Sequence record: OZ195776.1
Strand: one strand, 5' to 3'
DNA: 64,000 nt
Positions 21,714-41,214 of the stretch are shown here, piece by piece (the first letter of the stretch is position 1; each line of letters begins with the position of its first letter). The translations under genes were made by a program, and so were the position numbers. The notes beneath the pieces are model-generated. The model did no database searches. It saw only the letters and a program-made list of their open reading frames with translations, and was not told the DNA's origin.

Positions 21714-23156
21714 TTAACCGCGGAAGAATTCCAGATCGTAGCGCTCGTTGCCAACCGCTTGCATCATGATCTTCACAGGTTCAAGCTCACCACCCAACAA
21801 GTTGGTTAGGATGCTTGGCGAACAGCCGCTTACTAGAGCAGTGCCCACTTCACCAGACTTAACTGGTACGTTGCCGATACGACCACGTAGGTTCCAGAAA
21901 ACCAGTTGTGGCATTTCGTAACCAGCTCGAGCGTACTCTTGCTTGATTACTTCCAAGTTGGTCTTCTGACCACCGCCCCAGTAACCTGCACCAGCTTGGT
22001 CGAATTCCATGTCTGACAGAATCAGCATCTTGGTTGGTAGGTCTTCTTGCGATAGACCCGCTTGAACTGCACGTTGCAATAGGACTCGGAAGACCTTGTT
22101 CACGTCAGTCGACATGTTTTCGCCTGAGCGATCCATGTTCATTAGGCGTTCGTGCAACGTTGCACCTTTCAGTGCGTGGAAGTGTGGGTCGCTTGAGAAC
22201 GAAATGAATTGGTTCTGGAAGATACCTTCATTGCGCTCTGCGATGTAAATGCCCAAAGACATTGCAACATCTTTACAAGTTACCGAACCAGTACCTGCGT
22301 TGATTGGAGTCTGCATAGAGCCAGACACGTCAACGATTGGCATGATGCGTTCGTCGCTACCTTCCATGTAGTTAGGTAGAGCCTTCCACTGTGCATCCGC
22401 TACGCGAGCATCACCTCGGTTGACTGACTTAACAATGTCGTATGGGTAAACCGCACCAGCGTTGATCTTCTCAGTGCCTTTTTCAAGACCTTGAATGTAC
22501 TGAGTGTACGTTTCCTGAGCGTTGCGACCAAACGCTTTTTGGTATCGAGCAGAAGCTACCGATGGTAGTTTGCCGAATTCAATTGCGTCCCACTCACGAG
22601 CACACATCTTCTGTTCAACGGTATCAGACAACATTGACAGAATCTTACGAAGCTGTTTGTTCTTGATATCAGCAGCTTTTGCAAGCGCTTTGAAGACATG
22701 ACCGTTTGCAGACTTCTCACGAGGAGTCCACTTCGCAGCAAGGCCGTTGCGCTCGTTTACCAACGCGTTCAGCCAAAGAGCTTCTGCATCAGCTTGAACT
22801 TGCGTACCAAAGGCAACCACAAGATCATCCCAACGACCAAGAGCTGGAACTTTGAACATTACTGCTCGCGCCAAATCTGGTTTCTCGTTACACAGTTTTG
22901 CGAATACCGTACGGAATACGTTACGCTCACCTGCACCACCACGAACGTCACGAGCCCACATCAAGATGCGAGTTGCAACTTCTTGGTTTTCACCGAACGC
23001 TCGGCTAAACAGAGTTACTGCTTCATCAGGAGTACGGCGAAGCGCACCAGCTGTGAAGAACCAGTCCAGACAAGCTGTACCGGATGTTGAATGTGTTACC
23101 GCACCGTTTTCAGTACGTGCGTCGTTTGTTTGCATTGCGTTCATAAAGTTGCTCAT
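21714..23156 (-). CDS. DUF2828-type Ro60/TROVE-like vWA protein
   Basis: T.NGA...STSG.ACLDWF, WARDVRGGAGER, GRWDDL, AAKWTPRE, IVDVSGSM MIDAS, ILSDMEFD, FWNLR. Confidence 0.85.
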   Translation of the reverse strand: MSNFMNAMQTNDARTENGAVTHSTSGTACLDWFFTAGALRRTPDEAVTLFSRAFGENQEVATRILMWARDVRGGAGERNVFRTVFAKLCNEKPDLARAVMFKVPALGRWDDLVVAFGTQVQADAEALWLNALVNERNGLAAKWTPREKSANGHVFKALAKAADIKNKQLRKILSMLSDTVEQKMCAREWDAIEFGKLPSVASARYQKAFGRNAQETYTQYIQGLEKGTEKINAGAVYPYDIVKSVNRGDARVADAQWKALPNYMEGSDERIMPIVDVSGSMQTPINAGTGSVTCKDVAMSLGIYIAERNEGIFQNQFISFSSDPHFHALKGATLHERLMNMDRSGENMSTDVNKVFRVLLQRAVQAGLSQEDLPTKMLILSDMEFDQAGAGYWGGGQKTNLEVIKQEYARAGYEMPQLVFWNLRGRIGNVPVKSGEVGTALVSGCSPSILTNLLGGELEPVKIMMQAVGNERYDLEFFRG

Positions 23157-26383: not shown

Positions 26384-26776
26384 CTAATCAGCAAATGGGT
26401 CCGACAAGTCATGTGCCAAACGAACGCGGTGCTTCTTGGAGACTCGGAATCCAGCTCGGTCAATGACTTCATCCAAGTTAATCCAATTCTTCATATTAAG
26501 CTCGAGATACTTTCCACTGCCGTGCCACGTACGATCACATACGATACGCGTACCAATGGACTGGTATTTTCCAGCAATAGTAGCGTACATCGTTTCTTCT
26601 TTCGTCTCGTACATAAAATCCCCATGTATAACGCGTATTCTAACGCGTGAGAACGATTCTACACCGAGGAACTCGTTGGAGATGAATCCGTTTACAGATA
26701 ATTTCATAAACGTCTGAGAATCCGGCATATCGCGGATTCTCTTCATCTTTTCAATTGATACTCGTTTGTTTATCAT
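26384..26776 (-). CDS. Hypothetical protein
   Basis: 130 aa ORF; ATGA overlap with the Sir2 gene. Confidence 0.65.
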   Translation of the reverse strand: MINKRVSIEKMKRIRDMPDSQTFMKLSVNGFISNEFLGVESFSRVRIRVIHGDFMYETKEETMYATIAGKYQSIGTRIVCDRTWHGSGKYLELNMKNWINLDEVIDRAGFRVSKKHRVRLAHDLSDPFAD

Positions 26777-27570
26777 AAGTCCATTCGCTTTTCAATATCT
26801 TCACGAACCAATTCGAACCCACGAGATGCTCCAAACGGAATCTTGCGGTCGATGATTGGCATGGCCATTGTCATTTCAGAGTAACCGTTCGACGGCATGT
26901 ACTCAGAATCTTCTGGATCGTACTCAGGGATCGCAGGATCAATCATGATTTTGTACGGGTATGGGTTTGTTGAGAAGAACCAACCAACGTAGTCGACGAC
27001 GCTTAGCTGCGTACCAACAACCACTACAGTGTCTTGAGGTCGAACTGCACCAGCACCACGTAGCAAAGAATTCATTTTCTCGTAGGCAGGCGCCATCTCA
27101 CCAAAGAAGATTACATCTGGCTTGGCGTTTAATTCAAACGTACGTGAATCGATACGGTCTTTCTCGTAATCGTACGCTGCGTAACCGATGTCTTTCGAAT
27201 CGCAATCAGGCGTCGTGTAGTCAGTAACGACTTTGGTCAGCTCACCATGAATATGCAGTACGTCTTCAACGCCAGCGCGTTCAAGCAAGTCTGATACATT
27301 TGCAGTAATGTTGATAACACGATCTTTACCGTATTTCTTTTGCATTTCAGCAATGAAATGGTGCGCTGCGTTTGGCTCAACATTTCCAAGTTGCATACGA
27401 CGTTCGTTATAGAACGAATGCACTTTTTCGTAGTTCTGAGCCCACGTACGGATGTTACAGACTTCGTTCAAATCAAACTTATCCCAGGTACCACCAGTAT
27501 CACGAAAGGTATTGATGCCAGACTCTTTGTCCAGACCAGCACCACTTAAAATAAAAAGTCTTGGTAACAT
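26773..27570 (-). CDS. Sir2/CobB-family NAD-dependent deacylase
   Basis: ILSGAGLDKESGINTFRD, PNAAH, TANVSDLLERAG, HIHGEL, KPDVIFFGE, VVVGT. Confidence 0.9.
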   Translation of the reverse strand: MLPRLFILSGAGLDKESGINTFRDTGGTWDKFDLNEVCNIRTWAQNYEKVHSFYNERRMQLGNVEPNAAHHFIAEMQKKYGKDRVINITANVSDLLERAGVEDVLHIHGELTKVVTDYTTPDCDSKDIGYAAYDYEKDRIDSRTFELNAKPDVIFFGEMAPAYEKMNSLLRGAGAVRPQDTVVVVGTQLSVVDYVGWFFSTNPYPYKIMIDPAIPEYDPEDSEYMPSNGYSEMTMAMPIIDRKIPFGASRGFELVREDIEKRMDL

Positions 27571-34057: not shown

Positions 34058-34534
34058 TTATTCTGAACGCTCTGTGCGTCTGCGTCTATACGTTGATGTT
34101 TGTGAATGACAATTTGGACACAACCAGGATAGGTTTTCCTTCCGATTATCGTTGCTAATTCCATTAACATGTTCCAGCTCCAATGTAAGAGGTTTCCCAT
34201 TCCAAGTATCCGGAATTCCACACTCATCACAGTGGTTTCGATAGAACCCTAATCGAATTGATATTTGTCGGGCGCTGCTACGAGGTGCAGTGCAATTCTC
34301 TACAAAGAACGATTCTTCGGTGTGTGAAAATTTATTACGCTTAAACGTCTTTTTAACATCAAAGTGTTCAGTAGACACGTCGTACTTATCACACAGCACT
34401 TTCAATCGATTTATATTGTATGTACAGACCGTTATACCAACACCACGGCACACATCACTCCAACAAAACGAATCACTTGCTACGGTGATTAGCTGTTCTA
34501 ACGTATAGTGCTTAAAATCTTTATTGCTTTTCAT
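34058..34534 (-). CDS. HNH homing endonuclease
   Basis: CDEC...LELEHVNGISNDNRKENLSWLCPNCH; stop codon overlaps the tRNA 3' exon. Confidence 0.92.
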   Translation of the reverse strand: MKSNKDFKHYTLEQLITVASDSFCWSDVCRGVGITVCTYNINRLKVLCDKYDVSTEHFDVKKTFKRNKFSHTEESFFVENCTAPRSSARQISIRLGFYRNHCDECGIPDTWNGKPLTLELEHVNGISNDNRKENLSWLCPNCHSQTSTYRRRRTERSE

Positions 34535-35173: not shown

Positions 35174-35481
35174 TTCTTCATCCCGTATTCGTGACGTAGA
35201 ACATTGATTGCATCATAGATCGCAATCTCACCCATTGTTGCTTTGCGAAGAAACTTCTTCTCGATCCAGCGACCGGTACCATCCATATCTTGGTGGTAAT
35301 GCCAATTGCCGTGTTCTAAGAATGCTTCTTTACGAAGCTCACCTTGCTTGCGCAGGTTCAATCCAAGTTTGTCAATCAGAACCTCAGATGGTATAGAACC
35401 GTCTGAGAACGCTTCTAAGAGCTGTTCGTCTGTAACTTGAATCTCACAAGGAACAAGACGAGTACCTTTAATAGTATTCAT
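35170..35481 (-). CDS. Hypothetical protein (paralog of the 34844 gene)
   Basis: Same shared motifs; RBS gagg. Confidence 0.7.
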   Translation of the reverse strand: MNTIKGTRLVPCEIQVTDEQLLEAFSDGSIPSEVLIDKLGLNLRKQGELRKEAFLEHGNWHYHQDMDGTGRWIEKKFLRKATMGEIAIYDAINVLRHEYGMKK

Positions 35482-35500
35482 TATATCCTCTTTAAATGAG

Positions 35501-35576
35501 TGGCACGCCTGGAGGGATTCGAACCCACGACCCGAAACTTAGAAGGTTCCTGCTCTTCCAACTGAGCTACAAGCGC
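35501..35576 (-). tRNA. tRNA-Arg(TCT)
   Basis: Loop CTTCTAA; CCA. Confidence 0.93.
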
Positions 35577-35577
35577 A

Positions 35578-36051
35578 TTATTTCAACGTAAATTTCAAAT
35601 TGCGATAATTGTACTTAGAGCCGTTATTACGACAAGTGTTAGTCCAGAAGTCACTCCAATCAATTTTGACGGGACATTTATCTGATCCAACGCGAGTACA
35701 GAACACATCCAAGTGCGGATATTTCAATTGCAGGTTAGCTGCCGTTTGGCGAACTGCCAGTGCATGCTCAGTACGTCTTTTAGCAAGTTCTCTACGAGAG
35801 TACGTGTTTTGCCAAAAATGACTACGCCAAATATTAACACGCTTCTCATCCCAACCCATGCTAAACGAATGTTCAACATAACCAGATAATTTACCAGTTT
35901 TAGGGTCACGAGCGAATATTGCGTAACAACGATGTCGAGTGAAATCGGTTCGTTCATATTTGTCGCAGTTAATAACGTTACCTTTCTTGGTGGTACGAGA
36001 GTGTTTAATCATCGGACACCTCGAAAGATTTAAAGCGTTTATCGAACTCAC
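35578..36051 (-). CDS. Hypothetical basic protein (start may be MIKHSR)
   Basis: Long ORF between RNA genes. Confidence 0.6.
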   Translation of the reverse strand: MSSINALNLSRCPMIKHSRTTKKGNVINCDKYERTDFTRHRCYAIFARDPKTGKLSGYVEHSFSMGWDEKRVNIWRSHFWQNTYSRRELAKRRTEHALAVRQTAANLQLKYPHLDVFCTRVGSDKCPVKIDWSDFWTNTCRNNGSKYNYRNLKFTLK

Positions 36052-36190
36052 TTAGACAAGTATCAGCCCAAGACGTTGCTACGTCTTTTTCTCTGCAATC
36101 ATTTGCATTTGCTGTTGATGTCCACGCTCGAACCCACACATCACGACGTTGTTCTTCGTGACGAGCTTCTGCTTTTGTAAATTTTGGCAT
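36005..36190 (-). CDS. Hypothetical protein
   Basis: MPKFTKAEARHEEQRRDVW..., RBS gagg. Confidence 0.6.
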   Translation of the reverse strand: MPKFTKAEARHEEQRRDVWVRAWTSTANANDCREKDVATSWADTCLSEFDKRFKSFEVSDD

Positions 36191-36206
36191 TTTAATTTCC
36201 TCTTGA

Positions 36207-36475
36207 TGCCCCACCGTGGATTCGAACCACGCAGTCCATTCATTTTCCTAATACGCAAGGGGCTTGTTAGATTTAGAACCTTAACGTCAATAGAAACTAC
36301 AATTCATCGCTTTCCTGGTGTTAATAACTAACACTGCTTTCACACCAGTAATTACTCAACTCTGTATCTCAATGAAACAAGTTCGTCGGTGAAATTGTCG
36401 TTAATTAGACGACGCATTCTCGGAACAAGTTAGTCTGAGCATGACCATGTCAACGGTCTCCAGTTAGAATGGGGC
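36207..36475 (-). ncRNA. tRNA-like RNA with a large internal domain (5' end uncertain)
   Basis: 3' CGTGG-TTCGAAT-CCACG-GTGGGGC-A pairs with GCCCCAT 270 nt upstream; a closer alternative is GCCCCTT at about 36265. Confidence 0.4.
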
Positions 36476-36497
36476 TTTGTTTAATACATAATGTAAT

Positions 36498-36616
36498 CGG
36501 CCGGTGTAGGACTCGAACCTACGACCACGAGCTTAACGGGCTATTGAGTTTAGTGTGCGGTATCGATTCTTGACAGAATCATTTCATACGTGCTCTACCA
36601 ACTGAGCTAACCGGCC
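36498..36616 (-). tRNA. tRNA-Asn(GTT) with a 46-nt insert (36543-36588) at position 28/29
   Basis: Removing the insert gives stem CG|AGC / GCTCG with loop CCGTTAA. Confidence 0.8.
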
Positions 36617-36626
36617 ATAATTTATT

Positions 36627-37034
36627 TTACTCTGATTTAACATCCAAAGTAAACAGTTTTGCATTGCTTTCTTTCATCGGTTGAACGCCGACTATTTCTT
36701 CTGCAAGTAACGATGGGACAACTTGCTTCGGAATTTTGACGGTAACGCCACTTTCCTTTGCTTGCTCGCGAAGTTCTTTTGAACGTTCACGTAACATTGC
36801 AAGATGTTCTTCACGTTTTGTTACTATGTCATCAAGGTGCTCGTCGATAGTACCGATTTCGTACTTCTCACCGTAAGCAAAGGCAGTATGCCAGTGAATC
36901 TTTTTAAATTCAGCAATCTGCTTGATGTCTTTGATGACGCGTACTTCGTCGTAAACCCAACCACAGTTGATACATTCAATTGCGATTTGATCTCCGTTTT
37001 CATCGAAGAATAAAGCGTTACTTGGTAAACTCAT
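36627..37034 (-). CDS. Hypothetical protein
   Basis: 135 aa ORF. Confidence 0.65.
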   Translation of the reverse strand: MSLPSNALFFDENGDQIAIECINCGWVYDEVRVIKDIKQIAEFKKIHWHTAFAYGEKYEIGTIDEHLDDIVTKREEHLAMLRERSKELREQAKESGVTVKIPKQVVPSLLAEEIVGVQPMKESNAKLFTLDVKSE

Positions 37035-37060
37035 AATATAATCTCACGAAATAAAACAAT

Positions 37061-37190
37061 TGGTAGAGGGTGCAGGATTCGAACCTGCGCCACGGAATTT
37101 AAGAGTTTCAATGCAATTTTGGTTGCCGCAACTATTCTTTCCAGAATAATGTTTGTGCTACGTGTGCTTGCCGTTTTACACCAACCCTCT
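37061..37190 (-). tRNA. tRNA-Lys(CTT)-like with a 51-nt insert (37110-37160) at position 28/29
   Basis: Removing the insert gives CG|GAA / TTCCG around A-CTCTTAA-A; CCA encoded. Confidence 0.7.
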
Positions 37191-37289
37191 ACGAATTGTT
37201 CTAGTTGATAGATTCTGAGTTCATCTTTCACACTCAAGGTTCTATCGGACCTGCGGCTAAGTGACTAAGCTTCGCCGTTAAAATAAACA

Positions 37290-37431
37290 GGATGTACAAA
37301 TCTTCTGGTGCGTTTTCCAATTCGCTACCTCCCCGTCGATACATTATTGGTGGGGAGGGTTGGGATTCGAACCCAACTCATCACAAAAGTGAACCAGTTC
37401 TACTCGATTAATATTACGCTGTAGACATCCT
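37290..37431 (-). tRNA. Circularly permuted class II tRNA (Leu-like) flanked by the split mini-intron
   Basis: Minus-strand order: intron 3' half, 3' exon (variable arm, T arm, CCA at 37348-37350), 13-nt linker, 5' exon GGGGAGGTAGCGAATTGGAAAACGCACC, intron 5' half. Confidence 0.7.
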
Positions 37432-37436
37432 TAAAT

Positions 37437-37515
37437 TGGCCAGTAGTAAGGGACTCGAACCCAAGCACGGACTCCACGAGGGCGACTGCTTTACCTAACA
37501 TAAGCTAAACTACTT
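37437..37515 (-). pseudogene. Degenerate tRNA (anticodon stem unpaired; possibly Arg TCG)
   Basis: Acceptor, D and T arms and CCA present; anticodon arm does not pair. Confidence 0.55.
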
Positions 37516-37522
37516 TCAAATT

Positions 37523-37641
37523 TGGCGCGTGTGACAGGACTCGAACCTGTGACCTCCGGCGGGATTAATGTAATTGCTGTAACGATTCATTACTGAATCC
37601 ATTTATTAGGCCGGCATTCTAACCAACTGAATTACACACGC
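37523..37641 (-). tRNA. tRNA-Asp-like with a 42-45 nt insert in the anticodon loop (about 37564-37608)
   Basis: Asp-type D arm (ATTC/GAAT), stem CCGGC/GCCGG; same insert consensus; possible mature loop CT-ATC-CC. Confidence 0.7.
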
Positions 37642-37659
37642 GATGTTAAAAACAATTTG

Positions 37660-37780
37660 AGCAGCGTACAGGATTCGAACCTGTGTTACCTCCTGGAAAT
37701 GGAATTAGCGTTAGTTGCTGAAAGCATCTTTACCAAGATACATTGCTTTTAGGTGTCCTAGGCCACTAGACGAACGCTGC
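37660..37780 (-). tRNA. tRNA-Glu(TTC) with a 48-nt insert (37704-37751) at position 28/29
   Basis: Removing the insert gives CC|TCC / GGAGG with loop ATTTCCA; Glu-type D arm. Confidence 0.8.
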
Positions 37781-37807
37781 TCAAATTGTTTTTATTAAGT
37801 CTTATTG

Positions 37808-37931
37808 CCGGCGGGGCTGGATTCGAACCAGCGACCTCGTGCTCCCTATGCAATTAATAATTGGTTGCGGTACCCAATCTTTTCAGATTGGTTTATTAAT
37901 ACGCGCGCTAACCTGACTGCGCTACCCGCCG
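37808..37931 (-). tRNA. tRNA-Pro(AGG) with a 49-nt insert (37853-37901) at position 28/29
   Basis: Removing the insert gives CG|TGC / GCACG with loop ATAGGGA; Pro-type body. Confidence 0.8.
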
Positions 37932-38010
37932 GCAATAAGACCTAATTGTGTTCATATCTTCCCAAAGAGACAGCAACGATATGACTGGGCTGCTTAATCA
38001 ACTTGCGGTT

Positions 38011-38039
38011 ACTATATAATCAAATGATTCAGAAGTAAA
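38011..38039 (-). promoter_or_regulatory. T4-early-type sigma70 promoter (tRNA cluster)
   Basis: Minus strand (G)TTTACT-17 nt-TATAGT. Confidence 0.7.
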
Positions 38040-38120
38040 CCGTTTTTTACATCTTCCTAAAAGAGGCGGTAACGATGTAACAGGACCGCTTTTGCAACCG
38101 TAGTTGCTTCAACAGGGCTT

Positions 38121-38149
38121 ACTATCTGATAGTTAATTTCAAAAGTAAA
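38121..38149 (-). promoter_or_regulatory. Second tandem early-type promoter
   Basis: Minus strand (G)TTTACT-17 nt-GATAGT. Confidence 0.6.
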
Positions 38150-38159
38150 CCGCTTTTTT

Positions 38160-38420
38160 CTACATCCGAGATGGATCAAGAATGATGCCAGCTTCGGATA
38201 CTCCACAACGTTGAGCTTCCTGCATATTTTGCAATTGGGCAACAGCGTGTTGAAGTTCTGTTAGAAGTTTTTCGTACATACTCTGATTGTCTTTTAGTAG
38301 CGCAATCTGATCCGACTGCATGCCAACAATGTAAGTCAACAGAATGACGTTTTCCGGATCGGTAAGTGATTCCGGATCTTCGTGGTACTTAGCAAGTACC
38401 AATTGAGTTTCATTATCCAT
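38160..38420 (-). CDS. Hypothetical coiled-coil protein
   Basis: Start re-assigned to MDNETQL (38420). Confidence 0.6.
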   Translation of the reverse strand: MDNETQLVLAKYHEDPESLTDPENVILLTYIVGMQSDQIALLKDNQSMYEKLLTELQHAVAQLQNMQEAQRCGVSEAGIILDPSRM

Positions 38421-38466
38421 AGTAAATCTCATTTGACAACAATTAATTTGTGATTTAATTATACGC

Positions 38467-38498
38467 AAAGAAAAAGCGGGATAAACCCGCTTCTTTTT
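38467..38498 (-). terminator. Rho-independent terminator
   Basis: Minus strand aagcggg-tttat-cccgctttttcttt. Confidence 0.75.
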
Positions 38499-38787
38499 AG
38501 TGATCTTCCGAACCGTATTCCCAATCGTCATACAATTCATCAGCACCCTTTTCGTTTCTTCCTACCCAGATATCTTCCGGTTCCAGAACATTCACATCAG
38601 AGCCATTTACAACGCCCCAGAACACGATATACTCGCCGTTACGTTTGATTGCTTTGAATACATAACTGTTCTTCGGAACTGCCTTAGAATCGAATCTACG
38701 GCGTTCTACGACCGTTTCGATAGCATGAGCAAGATTAACGAATCTCCAGTTCATAGTTGCTTCTGAATAGAAGTCCATAAAACCCAT
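38497..38787 (-). CDS. Hypothetical protein
   Basis: 96 aa ORF, RBS aggag. Confidence 0.65.
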   Translation of the reverse strand: MGFMDFYSEATMNWRFVNLAHAIETVVERRRFDSKAVPKNSYVFKAIKRNGEYIVFWGVVNGSDVNVLEPEDIWVGRNEKGADELYDDWEYGSEDH

Positions 38788-38789
38788 CG

Positions 38790-39218
38790 TTATCTCCTTG
38801 TAAGCAAGAAATTACCGTTGCTGAATGAATACGCATATCCAATATCGCCAGCAAATCGTCTAGTTAAACGCTCATAGAGTTTCTTACGTGACGGTTCGTT
38901 ATCTGCCGCCTCGAAGTACAAATACATTGGTTGGTGATCGTGTAGCACCTCACGTACACCAGCTAACACTGTTCCCAATACAGTCAACTCACTGCCCGTA
39001 CCAGTAATACTCATATCTTGACCACGATCTCCAATTAACGCGAAGCTAATCGTCATCATGTCTTTCTGATATTCATACGAGGTTGTTAGTACGTACGTTT
39101 CTCCACCCACTTCAAACTCACCGTGTGATTGGTCGTGGGTATAGTTGTTGCTGTGATTCCAACGAATTGGTACAGATCTCTTGAGCGCCTCAACCATGTA
39201 TGTTTGAAGCGTCTTCAT
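38790..39218 (-). CDS. Hypothetical protein, paralog family 1 of 3, capsid-targeting-like N-terminus
   Basis: MKTLQTYMVEA; shared F.VG..Y...V...V...P..F.A...SRKKLY.RL..RFA...GY domain. Confidence 0.75.
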   Translation of the reverse strand: MKTLQTYMVEALKRSVPIRWNHSNNYTHDQSHGEFEVGGETYVLTTSYEYQKDMMTISFALIGDRGQDMSITGTGSELTVLGTVLAGVREVLHDHQPMYLYFEAADNEPSRKKLYERLTRRFAGDIGYAYSFSNGNFLLTRR

Positions 39219-39219
39219 A

Positions 39220-39921
39220 TTACCATTCCTCGAATGTAGCGTAAGCGTCATCGATATCGTCAGTTACGTACGAATCATCTTGATCAAGAATAATGTGACG
39301 TTTGCTTGTACCACGAACCACACCTGAGATAACAACAACATCGAAGCCGTCTTGCGACATGCCAAGAATTACCATTTCTTTACCAGGTTTCAACCAACGG
39401 AACTCACGAACTTCGAATGGGAACATCAAATCGTTTGAGTTATCGATTGCCAATTGCACTTCTTCTTCTGTCCATTCTGCATCTTTGCGTTGTGCACGAA
39501 CAAGAGTGTATTTGTTGCGATCGATTGTAAATGTGTAACCAGCGTCTTCTGCAAAGCGCTTAACAAGACGGTCGTACAATTTCTTACGGCTATCTCGTTT
39601 GTCGTCATGTTCGTAAGCAGTGAAGAAAATCTTCGTCGGGCTCTTGCGATCAATGTACTCTTTCACAGCTTTTAAAACTGAGGTGATAACTTTTAGCGTT
39701 TCGCTTGGTGAACCAGTTACGTTATTCGCAGAGACATTCATTCTGCCGCGTTCATTAACAGAACCGTAAGCTACTTCGGTGTATCCACCAAAACCAGCAA
39801 ATTCAATCACATACTGCGTTGAACCAACACGGAAGTTCGCGTCGTTGTCGTTTTTCCATTGAATTGGTGCGGCTTTCGCTAAGTCAAGCGCTTCCACCAT
39901 AAATTGTTTAAAGTCGTTCAT
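39220..39921 (-). CDS. Hypothetical protein, paralog family 2 of 3
   Basis: MNDFKQFMVEA; same domain plus a C-terminal extension. Confidence 0.75.
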   Translation of the reverse strand: MNDFKQFMVEALDLAKAAPIQWKNDNDANFRVGSTQYVIEFAGFGGYTEVAYGSVNERGRMNVSANNVTGSPSETLKVITSVLKAVKEYIDRKSPTKIFFTAYEHDDKRDSRKKLYDRLVKRFAEDAGYTFTIDRNKYTLVRAQRKDAEWTEEEVQLAIDNSNDLMFPFEVREFRWLKPGKEMVILGMSQDGFDVVVISGVVRGTSKRHIILDQDDSYVTDDIDDAYATFEEW

Positions 39922-39925
39922 TTCA

Positions 39926-40705
39926 TTACCTATCGTATTCGATGCGATGCTTATCAAGCACCTTGTAAGTTTCTGGATTTTTGAAAGATGTGCGCATATG
40001 TTTGACGTAACCGTTGGAGTAACCGTTAGCAGCCATCATCTCTCCAATCATTTTATCCAACGTGTCGACGTAATCGCCAAGAGGACCGATATGAGATAGA
40101 TCAACCACACCAGTAGTTGGTTCGTCTTCCATTGGATGAATGTTTACCACAACACCACCTGCGCCATTCGAGAACATACCAACACGTTTTTGGTCATTCT
40201 GATAGTTGATATCGTACAACACGCCTTTTGGAGCGTCTTTAACCAAATCATATTGCATTTTGTTCTTGAACGTGGCTGTTGATAACGAGTAACCGTATTG
40301 TTTACCCATTTTCTTAAACAACATCGAATACAGACGTTCGCGCTTCTTACGAAACTCTTCGTTTGAATCAGGATATGCCCAAGTTTGAATGCGAGTTGGT
40401 GAACACCAATCCATTGCTTGTTTTGCTGCTTCAATAACTGTCGCGAAAACTTGCAAAGCGTTATCGGTGTCTGTTTGATCGTTTGTCCAATCTCGCTTAG
40501 ATGCATCGAACGCCATGAAATGAATTTCCATGAGGTCGCTGGTCTTTTCCTCTGTCACGCCGCGATGAATAACGATCGCTTTGTACATCACCTTACCAAC
40601 TTGAAATATCCCCTCAAGTGGTCGATCGGAACGAACAGCATTGCTTTTCCAAGTAATCCGAGCTGGTTTATCAAACGCTTCAGTTAAGAAGGTTCTGAAT
40701 TCCAT
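39926..40705 (-). CDS. Hypothetical protein, paralog family 3 of 3
   Basis: MEFRTFLTEA; same domain plus a different extension. Confidence 0.75.
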   Translation of the reverse strand: MEFRTFLTEAFDKPARITWKSNAVRSDRPLEGIFQVGKVMYKAIVIHRGVTEEKTSDLMEIHFMAFDASKRDWTNDQTDTDNALQVFATVIEAAKQAMDWCSPTRIQTWAYPDSNEEFRKKRERLYSMLFKKMGKQYGYSLSTATFKNKMQYDLVKDAPKGVLYDINYQNDQKRVGMFSNGAGGVVVNIHPMEDEPTTGVVDLSHIGPLGDYVDTLDKMIGEMMAANGYSNGYVKHMRTSFKNPETYKVLDKHRIEYDR

Positions 40706-40758: not shown

Positions 40759-41214
40759 TTAGGCGCTCTTCTCAACCCAGTCTAAATCCAGTGGTTCGCT
40801 ATACTCGTCAATTAAATTGATGGGTTGCGAAATGTCCAGTGGTTTGACTGCATCGTCATATGACAATGTTATGTGTGCGTTGTACTCAGGAAAATCGTGA
40901 GTACCGCCTGCATCGATTAAATCATCGTGTCGATTTTTCAACCCTTCCGATTTCAATTTAACGATGACTACTGACTTGCCTTCTTGATCTTTCCAACTAT
41001 CAACTCGATAGGCTTCCGCGTCATACGAGTTACCGGTAGATGGAACTTCAATCCCATTACGACTGTATAACACAGTCGCGTGAAACTTACTTGATTCAAG
41101 AGGATTGTTCAGTTTGAGCGTTTTCTGCAGCTCTTGTAACCATTCAGAGCTCGCAGAGTCTACTTTGACACCAACATAAGTGCCTTGGTTTTCAAGAAAC
41201 TGCTGAAACTTCAT
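40759..41214 (-). CDS. 57B: Anti-CBASS nuclease Acb1 (gp57B, 2H phosphoesterase)
   Basis: FHATVLYSR and HDFPEYNAHITLSY (two HxT motifs), EYSEPLDLDW C-terminus as in T4 57B. Confidence 0.9.
   Translation of the reverse strand: MKFQQFLENQGTYVGVKVDSASSEWLQELQKTLKLNNPLESSKFHATVLYSRNGIEVPSTGNSYDAEAYRVDSWKDQEGKSVVIVKLKSEGLKNRHDDLIDAGGTHDFPEYNAHITLSYDDAVKPLDISQPINLIDEYSEPLDLDWVEKSA

What the first reader, a model, noticed from the sequence alone, without database searches (positions are those of the whole stretch)
36498..37931. New family of 45-51 nt intron-like elements inserted in five different tRNA genes
Minus-strand alignment: Asn TATGAAAT-GATTC-TGTCAA-GAATC-GATACCGCAC-ACTAAACTC-AAT; Lys TAGCACAAACAT-TATTC-TGGAAA-GAATA-GTTGCGGCAA-CCAAAATTGC-ATT; Asp TAATAAATG-GATTC-AGTAAT-GAATC-GTTACAGCAA-TTACATT-AAT; Glu TAAAAGCAATG-TATCT-TGGTAA-AGATG-CTTTCAGCAA-CTAACGCT-AAT; Pro TATTAATAAA-CCAATC-TGAAAA-GATTGG-GTACCGCAA-CCAATTATT-AAT. 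All start TA, end AWT, and have a covarying 5-6 bp stem with a 6-nt loop followed by a TNCNGCA core. Four sit at the same site (28/29), and removing them restores the anticodon stem exactly. They are far too small for group I/II introns and show no obvious bulge-helix-bulge. Inference: an undescribed minimal self-splicing or phage-enzyme-spliced tRNA intron, or a mobile RNA module.
Basis: partly seen in the sequence, partly recalled or inferred. Interest (0 to 1): 0.95.

Follow-up and report, generated by a model that had tools for sequence, protein, structure and literature searches.

The report
Structured mini-inserts splitting phage tRNA genes
Five extra tRNA genes of this Vibrio phage are each interrupted in the anticodon arm by the same conserved ~45-50-nt hairpin module, which turns out to be widespread in phage tRNA genes, was not found in a partial scan of cellular genomes, matches no described intron or RNA family, and is most likely a new kind of tRNA intron.

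Summary
The window is Vibrio phage D479, a KVP40-like jumbo phage. Besides 25 ordinary tRNA genes it has five tRNA genes (Pro-AGG, Glu-UUC, an Asp-type body, Lys-CUU, Asn-GUU). Each is split by a 46-51-nt insert with one architecture: A-rich leader, 6-7-bp covarying hairpin capped U-GNNA-A, then N-U-N-C-N-G-C-A and a variable tail. There are five copies, not seven. A covariance model finds nothing else in 64 kb. Four inserts sit after nt 28 in the 5' strand of the anticodon stem, and deleting them restores a canonical cloverleaf. The same module occurs in KVP40 and Aeh1, where these genes were annotated as tRNA pseudogenes, and in about 90 unrelated IMG/VR phage contigs. It was absent from the first 120 pattern matches in cellular genomes. 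No Rfam family, bulge-helix-bulge, group I/II intron or known ribozyme fits. No insert-less alleles were found. Best reading (about 0.5): an undescribed phage tRNA intron, cut at the helix junction and resealed by RNA-repair ligases. Main rival (about 0.3): a retained protein-binding arm making a Y-RNA-like tRNA scaffold, since the phage encodes a Ro60-like protein. Splicing is unproven.

The parts
37808..37931 (-). Interrupted tRNA-Pro(AGG): exon1 37931-37902, insert 37901-37853 (49 nt, after nt 28), exon2 37852-37808
   Evidence: Sequence. Rfam tRNA 44.4 bits with a 60-nt insertion. CM R1 40.4 bits. Excision gives ARAGORN tRNA-Pro(agg), score 123.7. It has the C1-G72 pair that is characteristic of bacterial tRNA-Pro (my own knowledge).
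37660..37780 (-). Interrupted tRNA-Glu(UUC), bacterial Glu-type D arm: exon1 37780-37752, insert 37751-37704 (48 nt, after nt 28), exon2 37703-37660
   Evidence: 30.9 bits; the only window copy that was not in the model's training alignment; tRNA-Glu ttc, score 114.8.
37526..37641 (-). Asp-type tRNA body (G73, CCA encoded) with the module replacing most of the anticodon loop: intact stem CCGGC/GCCGG, insert 37609-37561
   Evidence: Rfam tRNA 59.6 bits with a 45-nt insertion in the loop. CM 41.3 bits. The excision point is ambiguous and the restored loop is non-canonical. Orthologue of KVP40 tRNA-Pseudo-5.
37061..37190 (-). Interrupted tRNA-Lys(CUU)-like: exon1 37190-37161, insert 37160-37110 (51 nt, after nt 28), exon2 37109-37061
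   Evidence: 41.0 bits. The split stem CG|GAA/TTCCG pairs perfectly. After excision the loop is ACUCUUAAA. Same body type as two KVP40 genes.
36498..36616 (-). Interrupted tRNA-Asn(GUU): exon1 36616-36589, insert 36588-36543 (46 nt, after nt 28), exon2 36542-36498
   Evidence: 36.1 bits; tRNA-Asn gtt, score 123.3. Orthologue of KVP40 tRNA-Pseudo-3. The split stem covaries: AGC/GCT here against TGC/GCA in KVP40.
37290..37430 (-). Permuted derivative ('X2'): module 3' stem strand + UACAGCG + tail + tRNA 3' half ending CCA (37430-37348), 13-nt linker, then tRNA 5' half + leader + module 5' stem strand (37334-37290)
   Evidence: Read from the sequence. Un-permuting it through an artificial loop and excising the module gives tRNA-Val(cac), score 110.7, with the junction after nt 28. 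The phage has no ordinary tRNA-Val. Weak Rfam permuted-tmRNA hit at 37326-37376. Only one instance is known, so its function is unproven.
21714..23156 (-). Ro60/Rsr-like RNA-binding protein (DUF2828 + DUF7788/vWA), a possible partner of the module
   Evidence: Pfam hits. AlphaFold model with pLDDT 78.6. Top Foldseek hits are D. radiodurans Rsr 2NVO, Thermus phage phiLo Ro60 9L5Y and Xenopus Ro 1YVR. The same family occurs in 16 of about 90 module-bearing IMG/VR loci.

Best explanation
The inserts are a previously undescribed, apparently phage-restricted class of tRNA intervening sequence. Each is transcribed as part of a pre-tRNA. The two halves of the anticodon stem pair across it, so the insert is looped out of a continuous helix. 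Its conserved core is an A-run, a 6-7-bp hairpin with a U-GNNA-A cap, and single-stranded N-U-N-C-N-G-C-A. That core is the cis signal recognised by a structure-specific activity, either a phage or host protein or the RNA itself, which cuts at the two junctions with the helix. After the cuts the exons remain base-paired as a nicked duplex, or as a broken loop in the loop-inserted members. They are then rejoined by an RNA-repair ligase: T4-type Rnl2, Rnl1 with Pnkp, or RtcB. The product is an extra, unusual tRNA. Shown here: the module, its covariation, its position, its wide spread in phages, and the restoration of tRNA structure on removal. Inferred: transcription, cutting, ligation, and the enzymes involved.
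For: (1) The module is one conserved structure. The hairpin pairs covary: 82.6% of cells are paired against 63.6% in shuffles, and 0 of 500 shuffles reach the observed value. U, C and GCA lie at fixed distances from the loop, though the regex used to collect the aligned sequences required them. An A-run in 58-62 of 74 sequences and an A-U pair at stem position 4 in 71 of 74 were not required by that regex. (2) It lies inside tRNA genes, always in the tRNA's orientation. In about 70 of 89 parsed cases it sits in the 5' strand of the anticodon stem after nt 26-29; the rest are in or beside the loop. (3) Deleting one contiguous piece makes ARAGORN call a canonical tRNA in 89 of 103 candidates, with scores of 103-129. 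All four stem-inserted D479 genes regain perfectly paired 5-bp stems. (4) The split stem shows compensatory change between orthologues: Asn AGC/GCT against TGC/GCA, and the Lys-type body GAA/TTC against ATC/GAT. (5) Identity features track the restored anticodon. All three Pro-anticodon genes have C1-G72, several Asp and Asn genes have G73, and one Gly gene has U73 (interpreted with textbook identity rules). (6) An insert in the anticodon stem or loop would be expected to block decoding, so a working tRNA requires its removal. (7) The permuted copy X2 is broken exactly in the hairpin loop. Like permuted or split tRNA genes elsewhere, it could yield a tRNA (Val, otherwise missing) only by cutting and ligation. 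(8) Phage tRNA arrays that carry the module also carry RNA-repair-type genes: a Ro60-like protein and a calcineurin-type phosphoesterase homologous to one in the RtcB/RNA-ligase cluster of Listeria phage LP-125. From my own knowledge, KVP40 encodes a nick-sealing Rnl2 with no assigned substrate (Yin et al. 2004, Virology).
Against: There is no expression or junction data. No tRNA-splicing endonuclease is known in bacteria or phages. There is no bulge-helix-bulge. No Rfam ribozyme or intron family scores at E<=10. Neither splice junction is conserved in sequence, and the leader (4-17 nt) and tail (8-14 nt) vary in length. No covariation links the module to the exons. So it is unclear how exact cuts would be specified. 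No single neighbouring gene accompanies all copies. Carriers are redundant with ordinary tRNAs in the same arrays. Many have odd loops after excision: A32 is common, KVP40-type 'B' genes have 8-nt loops, D479 Lys has a 9-nt loop, there is a class-I 'Tyr', and the Asp-type body gives a non-canonical loop. No insert-less alleles exist, which fits a required module at least as well as a removable one.
Confidence: 0.5

Rival explanations
1. The insert is never removed. The ~120-nt RNAs are tRNA-scaffolded non-coding RNAs in which the module is a protein-binding arm. They would resemble bacterial and phage Y RNAs (a Ro60-binding stem plus a tRNA-like domain), or act as decoys or sponges for tRNA-targeting defence nucleases. 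The most obvious candidate partner is the phage's Ro60-like protein.
For: The conserved single-stranded bases and invariant base pairs look like a protein-binding site, and no guide-like covariation is present. The module appears obligate, with no insert-less alleles. Carriers are redundant copies with non-canonical loops. D479 encodes a Ro60-like protein with no Rfam YrlA hit within several kb of its gene (19.5-29.7 kb searched). The same protein family lies in 16 of about 90 module loci and, going by Vibrio and Aeromonas jumbo-phage records of the same size class, in KVP40-like and Aeh1-like phages. Y RNAs are known tRNA mimics encoded near Ro60, also in phages (PMC4201824, PMC12135203). X2 has the topology I infer for YrlA (from PMC4201824 and my own recollection of it): a closed acceptor stem with the RNA ends in an extension of the anticodon arm, and that terminal stem is the module stem. 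The restored anticodons are biased to Tyr, Asn, Asp, His and Glu, which I recall as the usual targets of anticodon nucleases.
Against: The Ro60-like gene sits inside large tRNA arrays and is not specifically next to the interrupted gene. It also occurs without the module in FelixO1a, Listeria LP-125 and mycobacteriophage Kingsolomon. The module does not resemble the known Ro-binding helix. The perfectly maintained 7-nt loops with U33, the identity elements, and the compensatory changes in the split stem are more than a scaffold would need.
Confidence: 0.3
2. The module is a small self-cleaving and self-ligating ribozyme. It would cut both junctions by 2'-OH attack and reseal the exons on the template of the anticodon-stem 3' strand, or leave the sealing to RtcB.
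For: It has about 12-15 conserved nucleotides in 45 nt, which is typical of small ribozymes. The two scissile sites are adjacent in space because they flank one helix position. It is spread across very diverse phages with no common neighbouring gene.
Against: No known ribozyme family matches. The bases at the cleavage sites are not conserved, and the linkers between core and junctions vary in length. No natural RNA of this size is known to splice.
Confidence: 0.1
3. The genes are decaying tRNA pseudogenes that carry a DNA-level insertion (a MITE-like or homing-related scar) with no RNA function. This is how they were annotated in KVP40 and Aeh1.
For: They are annotated tRNA-Pseudo or tRNA-OTHER in KVP40, and three 'Pseudo' tRNAs are listed for Aeh1 (PMC1524935). 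Degenerate tRNA-like relics lie next to them in the window (37515-37436). [quoted passage not shown]
Against: Both the hairpin and the split anticodon stem show compensatory evolution. The module is conserved across phages whose flanks share about 70% identity or none at all. The insert is always in the sense orientation at one structural site. It has no terminal repeats or target duplication. No empty sites exist.
Confidence: 0.05

Closest known systems
Archaeal/eukaryal tRNA introns cut by the splicing endonuclease at a bulge-helix-bulge, including archaeal introns at non-canonical positions
   Same: They are short (tens of nt) and protein-free. They lie in the anticodon arm or elsewhere in the tRNA body. 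They are defined by structure rather than by junction sequence. The exons are held together by tRNA pairing and rejoined by a ligase.
   Different: There is no 3-nt bulge / 4-bp helix / 3-nt bulge here. The hosts are bacteriophages, where no EndA/Sen endonuclease is known. This module has its own conserved core (U-GNNA-A hairpin, UNCNGCA, A-run), which BHB introns lack.
Permuted and split tRNA genes (Cyanidioschyzon merolae; Nanoarchaeum equitans)
   Same: X2 has the 3' half upstream of the 5' half, with a short linker after CCA. A helix formed by the two transcript ends lies at the position of the intervening sequence.
   Different: The terminal helix is the module stem and not a BHB. It is a single case in a phage, and its processing is unknown.
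Bacterial and phage group I introns in tRNA anticodon loops
   Same: They interrupt bacterial-type tRNA genes. They are often associated with homing endonucleases in phage genomes.
   Different: Group I introns are at least ~200 nt, have a P1-P9 core and sit in the loop. These inserts are 34-55 nt with one hairpin, lie mostly in the stem, and give no Rfam hit.
'Enigmatic' tRNA introns of Lak megaphages (PMC6784885)
   Same: They are phage tRNA genes that are too long, were first called pseudo-tRNAs, and whose splicing mechanism is unknown.
   Different: The one Lak intron I looked at, in tRNA-Tyr, is 93 nt, lies in the anticodon loop after nt 37 and contains tRNA-like sequence. It shows no U-GNNA-A / UNCNGCA module.
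Y RNAs / YrlA with Ro60 (PMC4201824; phage phiLo Ro60, PMC12135203)
   Same: A tRNA-like domain is joined to a protein-binding stem. The RNA is encoded in phages that carry a Ro60 homologue. By my reading of the YrlA description, X2 shares its permuted topology.
   Different: The five genes keep tRNA ends in the acceptor stem, and the extra arm leaves from the anticodon stem. There is no YrlA match in Rfam. The module is unlike the known Ro-binding bulged helix.
T4 gene 60 50-nt bypass element with MobA (from my own knowledge: Bonocora et al. 2011, PNAS)
   Same: It is a ~50-nt hairpin-containing insert in an essential phage gene. It is neutralised at the expression level and linked to a free-standing homing endonuclease.
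   Different: That insert is skipped by the ribosome in an mRNA. Here the host gene is a tRNA, and no endonuclease link has been shown.

Membership tests
tRNA (the exons) | Cloverleaf with 7-bp acceptor stem, D arm, 5-bp anticodon stem, 7-nt loop with U33, and T arm with GTTCRANYC | tested here: met
   After excision ARAGORN calls all five D479 genes (scores 112-124) and 89 of 103 candidates overall. Rfam tRNA passes its gathering score for two of the five unexcised genes. Exceptions: Lys has a 9-nt loop, Asn has C33, and the Asp-type body has no canonical loop.
BHB (archaeal/eukaryal) tRNA intron | Two 3-nt bulges separated by a 4-bp helix formed between exon and intron at both junctions | tested here: not met
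   Inspection of all junctions finds no such pairing. A mutual-information scan over 62 non-redundant elements finds Watson-Crick covariation only inside the hairpin, and none between exon ends and the intron.
BHB (archaeal/eukaryal) tRNA intron | A splicing endonuclease (EndA/Sen) is present in the system | not tested
   I did not screen the whole phage or host genome. None was seen among the neighbouring ORF clusters.
Group I / group II intron | Conserved catalytic core (P3-P9 with G-binding site; or domains I-VI with GUGYG...AY ends), length >= ~200 nt | tested here: not met
   Lengths are 34-55 nt. There is no Rfam intron hit at E<=10 in 35400-38600 or at gathering score in the window.
Known small self-cleaving ribozymes (hammerhead, hairpin, twister, twister-sister, pistol, hatchet, HDV) | Match to the family's covariance model / conserved core | tested here: not met
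   There are no such hits in cmscan at E<=10. I found no hammerhead core (CUGANGA with GAAA) by eye.
YrlA / Y RNA | Terminal stem carrying the Ro60-binding bulged helix plus a tRNA-like domain; encoded near Ro60 | tested here: inconclusive
   Rfam YrlA gives only 16-bit chance-level hits, and not on the five genes. None lies near the Ro60-like gene. A Ro60-like gene is present 13-15 kb away, and X2 has what I take to be YrlA-like topology.
Mobile insertion (MITE, IS-derived or homing cassette) | Presence/absence polymorphism with empty sites; terminal repeats or target-site duplication | tested here: not met
   Exact-pattern scans of IMG/VR for the uninterrupted form of three carrier tRNA scaffolds found nothing. 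No terminal inverted repeats or duplications are visible in the sequences.

The most novel reading that the evidence does not exclude
This is a new, phage-specific class of intron with its own splicing chemistry or enzyme. A ~45-nt module would direct its own precise removal from the anticodon stem. The nicked-duplex product would be the long-sought natural substrate of phage Rnl2-type nick-sealing RNA ligases. The same system would also assemble a permuted or split tRNA (X2).
Probability: 0.3. Interest if true: 0.95.

Novelty: new variant of a known kind. Interest (0 to 1): 0.85.

Why it matters
Apart from self-splicing group I introns, bacteria and their viruses are thought to lack tRNA introns and tRNA splicing. 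If these inserts are removed, there is an unrecognised RNA-splicing pathway in phage-infected bacteria. Well-studied T4 relatives (KVP40, Aeh1) would carry it, hidden behind 'pseudogene' labels for about 20 years. It might also give phage RNA-repair enzymes a constitutive substrate. If the inserts are retained, they define a new, widespread family of tRNA-scaffolded RNAs that may work with phage Ro60 homologues or against tRNA-targeting defences. In both cases the motif is small, sharply defined and easy to test. It would also improve tRNA annotation in phage genomes.

Tried and rejected
1. Homology to T4 stable RNAs rnaC and rnaD: the sequences were read and the module is not present.
2. gp57B as an RNA ligase next to the cluster: despite its 'RNA ligase' label it is Acb1, the anti-CBASS 2H phosphodiesterase.
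3. A splicing enzyme encoded beside the inserts: clustering 1404 ORFs from about 90 loci gave no universal neighbour. The largest families were Ro60-like (16-18 loci), GIY-YIG (17), YkuK/RNaseH-like (10) and a metallophosphoesterase (8). Only the Ro60-like family is in the window.
4. A specific Ro60-like/module pairing: this is weakened because the gene is a general resident of phage tRNA arrays and occurs without the module.
5. A closing helix between leader and tail, a pseudoknot with the loop, and guide pairing of UNCNGCA to exons: none is supported by covariation.
6. Intrinsic terminator on the opposite strand (hairpin followed by a T-run): the stems are weak and spaced from the run, and this would not explain UNCNGCA.
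7. REP/IS200-like element, CRISPR-repeat mimic, boxB, preQ1 aptamer, anticodon-loop or T-loop mimic: I considered these from the sequence and dropped them.
8. Lak megaphage introns: these are a different kind.
9. BLAST of the two largest metagenomic carrier families against 50,697 phage genomes: no match.
10. The first gp57B locus search with a single protein found nothing. An alignment was needed.
11. Literature searches found no description of this element. The KVP40 genome paper was not available.
Full report
**Source and setting.** The window is part of Vibrio phage D479 (OZ195776.1, 257.8 kb; 100% identity). D479 is a KVP40-like jumbo T4 relative. On the minus strand, ARAGORN and Rfam find 25 ordinary tRNA genes between 29.6 and 35.6 kb. 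The finding lies just upstream of them in the same transcriptional direction. The depositors annotated four of the five loci as 116-124-nt 'tRNAs' with no product name.

**Checking the observation.** Each insert is 46-51 nt and has the same order of elements:
- an A-rich leader;
- a 5-7-bp stem;
- a 6-nt loop that reads U-GNNA-A. In the Asp-type copy it reads A-GUAA-U, so the closing pair is swapped, which marks it as a base pair around a GNNA tetraloop;
- then, exactly 8 nt after the loop, U-N-C-N-G-C-A;
- then a variable tail of 8-14 nt.

The linear motif alone occurs 6 times in the window against 0.81 expected, and 0 of 100 shuffles reach 6. I built a covariance model, R1, from 51 non-redundant copies. 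It scores the five copies at 31-41 bits and nothing else in 64 kb above 14.7 bits; four of the five window copies were among the 51 training sequences, and the Glu copy was not. So there are five copies, not seven.

In Pro, Glu, Lys and Asn the insert follows nt 28, in the 5' strand of the anticodon stem. The remaining three stem nucleotides downstream pair perfectly with the 3' strand. In the Asp-type body the anticodon stem is intact and the module occupies the loop, and no single excision gives a GUC loop.

**The module is a conserved, covarying structure found in many phages.**
- KVP40 has five homologous copies. Three have been annotated tRNA-Pseudo-3, -4 and -5 since 2003. Relatives nt-1, phi-Grn1, phi-ST2, V07, VS1, R11Z and D482 have three to five copies each.
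- I scanned IMG/VR for the loop, UNCNGCA and a T-loop 22-52 nt downstream. The pattern did not require the stem. It returned 92 stretches.
- In 80 of 97 pattern matches in those stretches, at least 4 of 5 stem positions pair, and 59 pair perfectly. Nearly all lie in tRNA-like genes of unrelated contigs, which range from a few kb to 523 kb and include Aeromonas phage Aeh1.
- The same scan of one genome per bacterial and archaeal species stopped at 120 stretches. There the stem-pair counts look random (3 perfect), and none of the matches is in a tRNA-like context.
- Among 80 loci of T4-like phages fetched through gp57B, only KVP40 and VH7D carry the module.
- Across 51 sequences, pairs 2-6 of the helix show many compensatory types: 82.6% of cells are paired against 63.6% in shuffles, and the covariation score is 0.56 against 0.17 (0 of 500 shuffles reach either).
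- The collecting regex required the loop G and A and the U, C and GCA of the tail, so their invariance across the alignment is by construction. What it did not require, and what is still conserved, is an A-U pair at the fourth stem position (71 of 74), a run of about five A just 5' of the stem (58-62 of 74) and, in the copies gathered without the IMG/VR pattern, a C-G pair next to the cap.

**What the carriers look like without the insert.** For every candidate I deleted every possible contiguous piece around the module and asked ARAGORN for a tRNA.
- 89 of 103 candidates give a canonical tRNA, with scores of 103-129. The failures include chance matches.
- The junction follows nt 26-29 in about 70 cases. 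It is often ambiguous by one or two positions because of repeated bases. In about 19 cases it lies in or beside the loop.
- The restored anticodons are biased: Tyr GUA 23 (mostly one clade), Asn GUU 12, Asp GUC 9, Glu UUC 6, then many singletons.
- Between orthologues the split stem changes in a compensatory way (Asn AGC/GCT against TGC/GCA; Lys-type GAA/TTC against ATC/GAT).
- All three Pro-anticodon genes have the C1-G72 pair typical of tRNA-Pro.

These points argue that the anticodon arm forms and that many carriers are, or recently were, real tRNAs. Against simple decoding, the carriers duplicate ordinary tRNAs in the same arrays, A32 is common, KVP40 'B' genes have 8-nt loops, D479 Lys has a 9-nt loop, and the 'Tyr' clade has a class-I body and a bulged T stem.

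**What it is not.**
- cmscan against Rfam 15 at E<=10 reports only tRNA plus chance-level hits. No intron, ribozyme or YrlA family appears.
- There is no bulge-helix-bulge, and no covariation between UNCNGCA, the leader or the tail and the exons.
- Junction bases are not conserved, beyond a tendency for the insert to begin UA.
- Exact-pattern scans for uninterrupted versions of three carrier scaffolds found none. The insert is therefore fixed in each lineage and is not a presence/absence polymorphism.
- In one Glu-type scaffold the insert is constant while the anticodon varies (GUC, GUU, UUC, UCU, UCG, UCC, GAU).

**Surroundings.**
- The 'RNA ligase' gene by the cluster (40759-41214) is Acb1.
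- Clustering the ORFs of the module loci gave no universal neighbour.
- The commonest family, DUF2828, has a strong homologue in the window at 21714-23156. Its model (pLDDT 78.6) matches Ro60/Rsr structures, including a phage Ro60.
- This protein occurs in 711 phage records, including Vibrio and Aeromonas jumbo phages of KVP40-like and Aeh1-like size.
- It is embedded in tRNA arrays in general, and it is also present in FelixO1a, LP-125 and Kingsolomon, which lack the module. It is therefore a candidate partner but not a specific one.

**A permuted copy.** Between the Asp-type and Lys genes lies X2. It runs: module 3' stem strand GGAUGU(C), then UACAGCG, a tail, and a tRNA 3' half ending CCA (37430-37348); then 13 nt; then the matching 5' half, a leader, and the module 5' stem strand ACAUCC (37334-37290). 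The break is exactly at the hairpin loop. Closing the loop artificially and excising the module gives tRNA-Val(CAC), score 110.7, with the junction after nt 28. D479 has no ordinary tRNA-Val. This is the layout of permuted tRNA genes that need cutting and ligation. As I read the published description of YrlA, it is also the topology of that Y RNA. It is a single case, so I treat it as a lead.

**Interpretation.** I favour a new class of phage tRNA intervening sequence (about 0.5). It would be looped out of the anticodon helix, recognised through its conserved core, cut at the helix junctions, and resealed by RNA-repair ligases. The nick left in a duplex is what Rnl2-type ligases seal (my own knowledge). 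The main rival (about 0.3) is a retained protein-binding arm that turns spare tRNAs into Y-RNA-like or decoy RNAs. A self-splicing ribozyme (about 0.1) and plain pseudogenes (about 0.05) are less likely. Only RNA data can decide between them.

**Novelty.** These genes have been visible as 'pseudo-tRNAs' in KVP40 and Aeh1 for two decades (PMC1524935). I found no description of the shared module or of its spread. The Lak megaphage authors wrote that, to their knowledge, introns in phage tRNAs had not been reported previously (PMC6784885), and the Lak intron I examined is of a different kind.

Noticed in passing
window 21714-23156 (-): Ro60/Rsr-like RNA-binding protein (DUF2828 + DUF7788). Its AlphaFold model matches Rsr, Xenopus Ro60 and Thermus phage phiLo Ro60. 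There is no Rfam YrlA hit within several kb of it (19.5-29.7 kb searched), so its RNA partner in this phage is unknown.
   Followed up: yes
window 37290-37430 (-): Circularly permuted tRNA-like gene (3' half, CCA, 13-nt linker, 5' half). Its transcript ends would form the module stem. Un-permuted and excised it reads as tRNA-Val(CAC), and Val is the only amino acid with no ordinary tRNA in this phage.
   Followed up: partly
window 37436-37515 (-): Degenerate tRNA-like sequence with weak anticodon and T stems, ending GGCCA. 44 nt of it (37467-37510) are 97.7% identical to a segment of unrelated 157-kb Vibrio phages (K476 group).
   Followed up: no
window 36205-36480 (-): A T arm plus acceptor 3' strand (CGTGGTTCGAATCCACG GTGGGGC A) lies about 260 nt downstream of a matching 5' strand GCCCCAT. 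This could be a tmRNA-like RNA or a tRNA-like RNA with a very long insert. ARAGORN and Rfam do not call it.
   Followed up: no
window 40759-41214 (-): The gp57B homologue, labelled 'RNA ligase' in the D479 and T4 records, is Acb1, the anti-CBASS cyclic-nucleotide phosphodiesterase (Pfam PF23474, E = 4e-40).
   Followed up: yes
window 36627-37034 (-): A 135-aa ORF lies between the Lys and Asn genes. Its last ~37 residues match the N-terminal part of the gp23 major capsid protein, which explains its 'major head protein' label.
   Followed up: no
window 38790-40705 (-): Three tandem paralogous ORFs (153, 245 and 259 aa) share an N-terminal domain (phrog_6387, weak DUF6934) of unknown function.
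   Followed up: no
window 26773-27570 (-) and 34058-34534 (-): A SIR2-family protein lies just beyond the tRNA cluster, between it and the Ro60-like gene. An HNH homing endonuclease gene lies inside the tRNA cluster.
   Followed up: no
L002 6225-6345 (KVP40) and orthologues in L003, L005, L006, L008: An unannotated interrupted tRNA ('B'). After excision its anticodon loop has 8 nt (AUUCAUAA, or AUUUCCAA in phi-Grn1-type phages). This is conserved across several phages and could mean quadruplet reading or a non-decoding role.
   Followed up: partly
IMG/VR loci such as L120, L133, L129, L103, L161, L179: One Glu-type tRNA scaffold always carries the module, but its anticodon differs between near-identical relatives (GUC, GUU, UCU, UUC, UCG). 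The discriminator base changes only sometimes.
   Followed up: partly
IMG/VR loci such as L099, L108, L150, L153: A clade of interrupted 'tRNA-Tyr(GUA)' genes has a short variable loop (class I, unlike bacterial tRNA-Tyr) and a covarying T stem with one bulged nucleotide. In at least two arrays (L130, L150) they sit alongside an ordinary tRNA-Tyr.
   Followed up: no
L305 12001-20232 (Listeria phage LP-125): A Ro60-like gene lies directly after the tRNA array. It is followed by genes for an RtcB-like ligase, a second RNA ligase and a metallophosphoesterase. This is a phage RNA-repair cluster with no copy of the module.
   Followed up: partly
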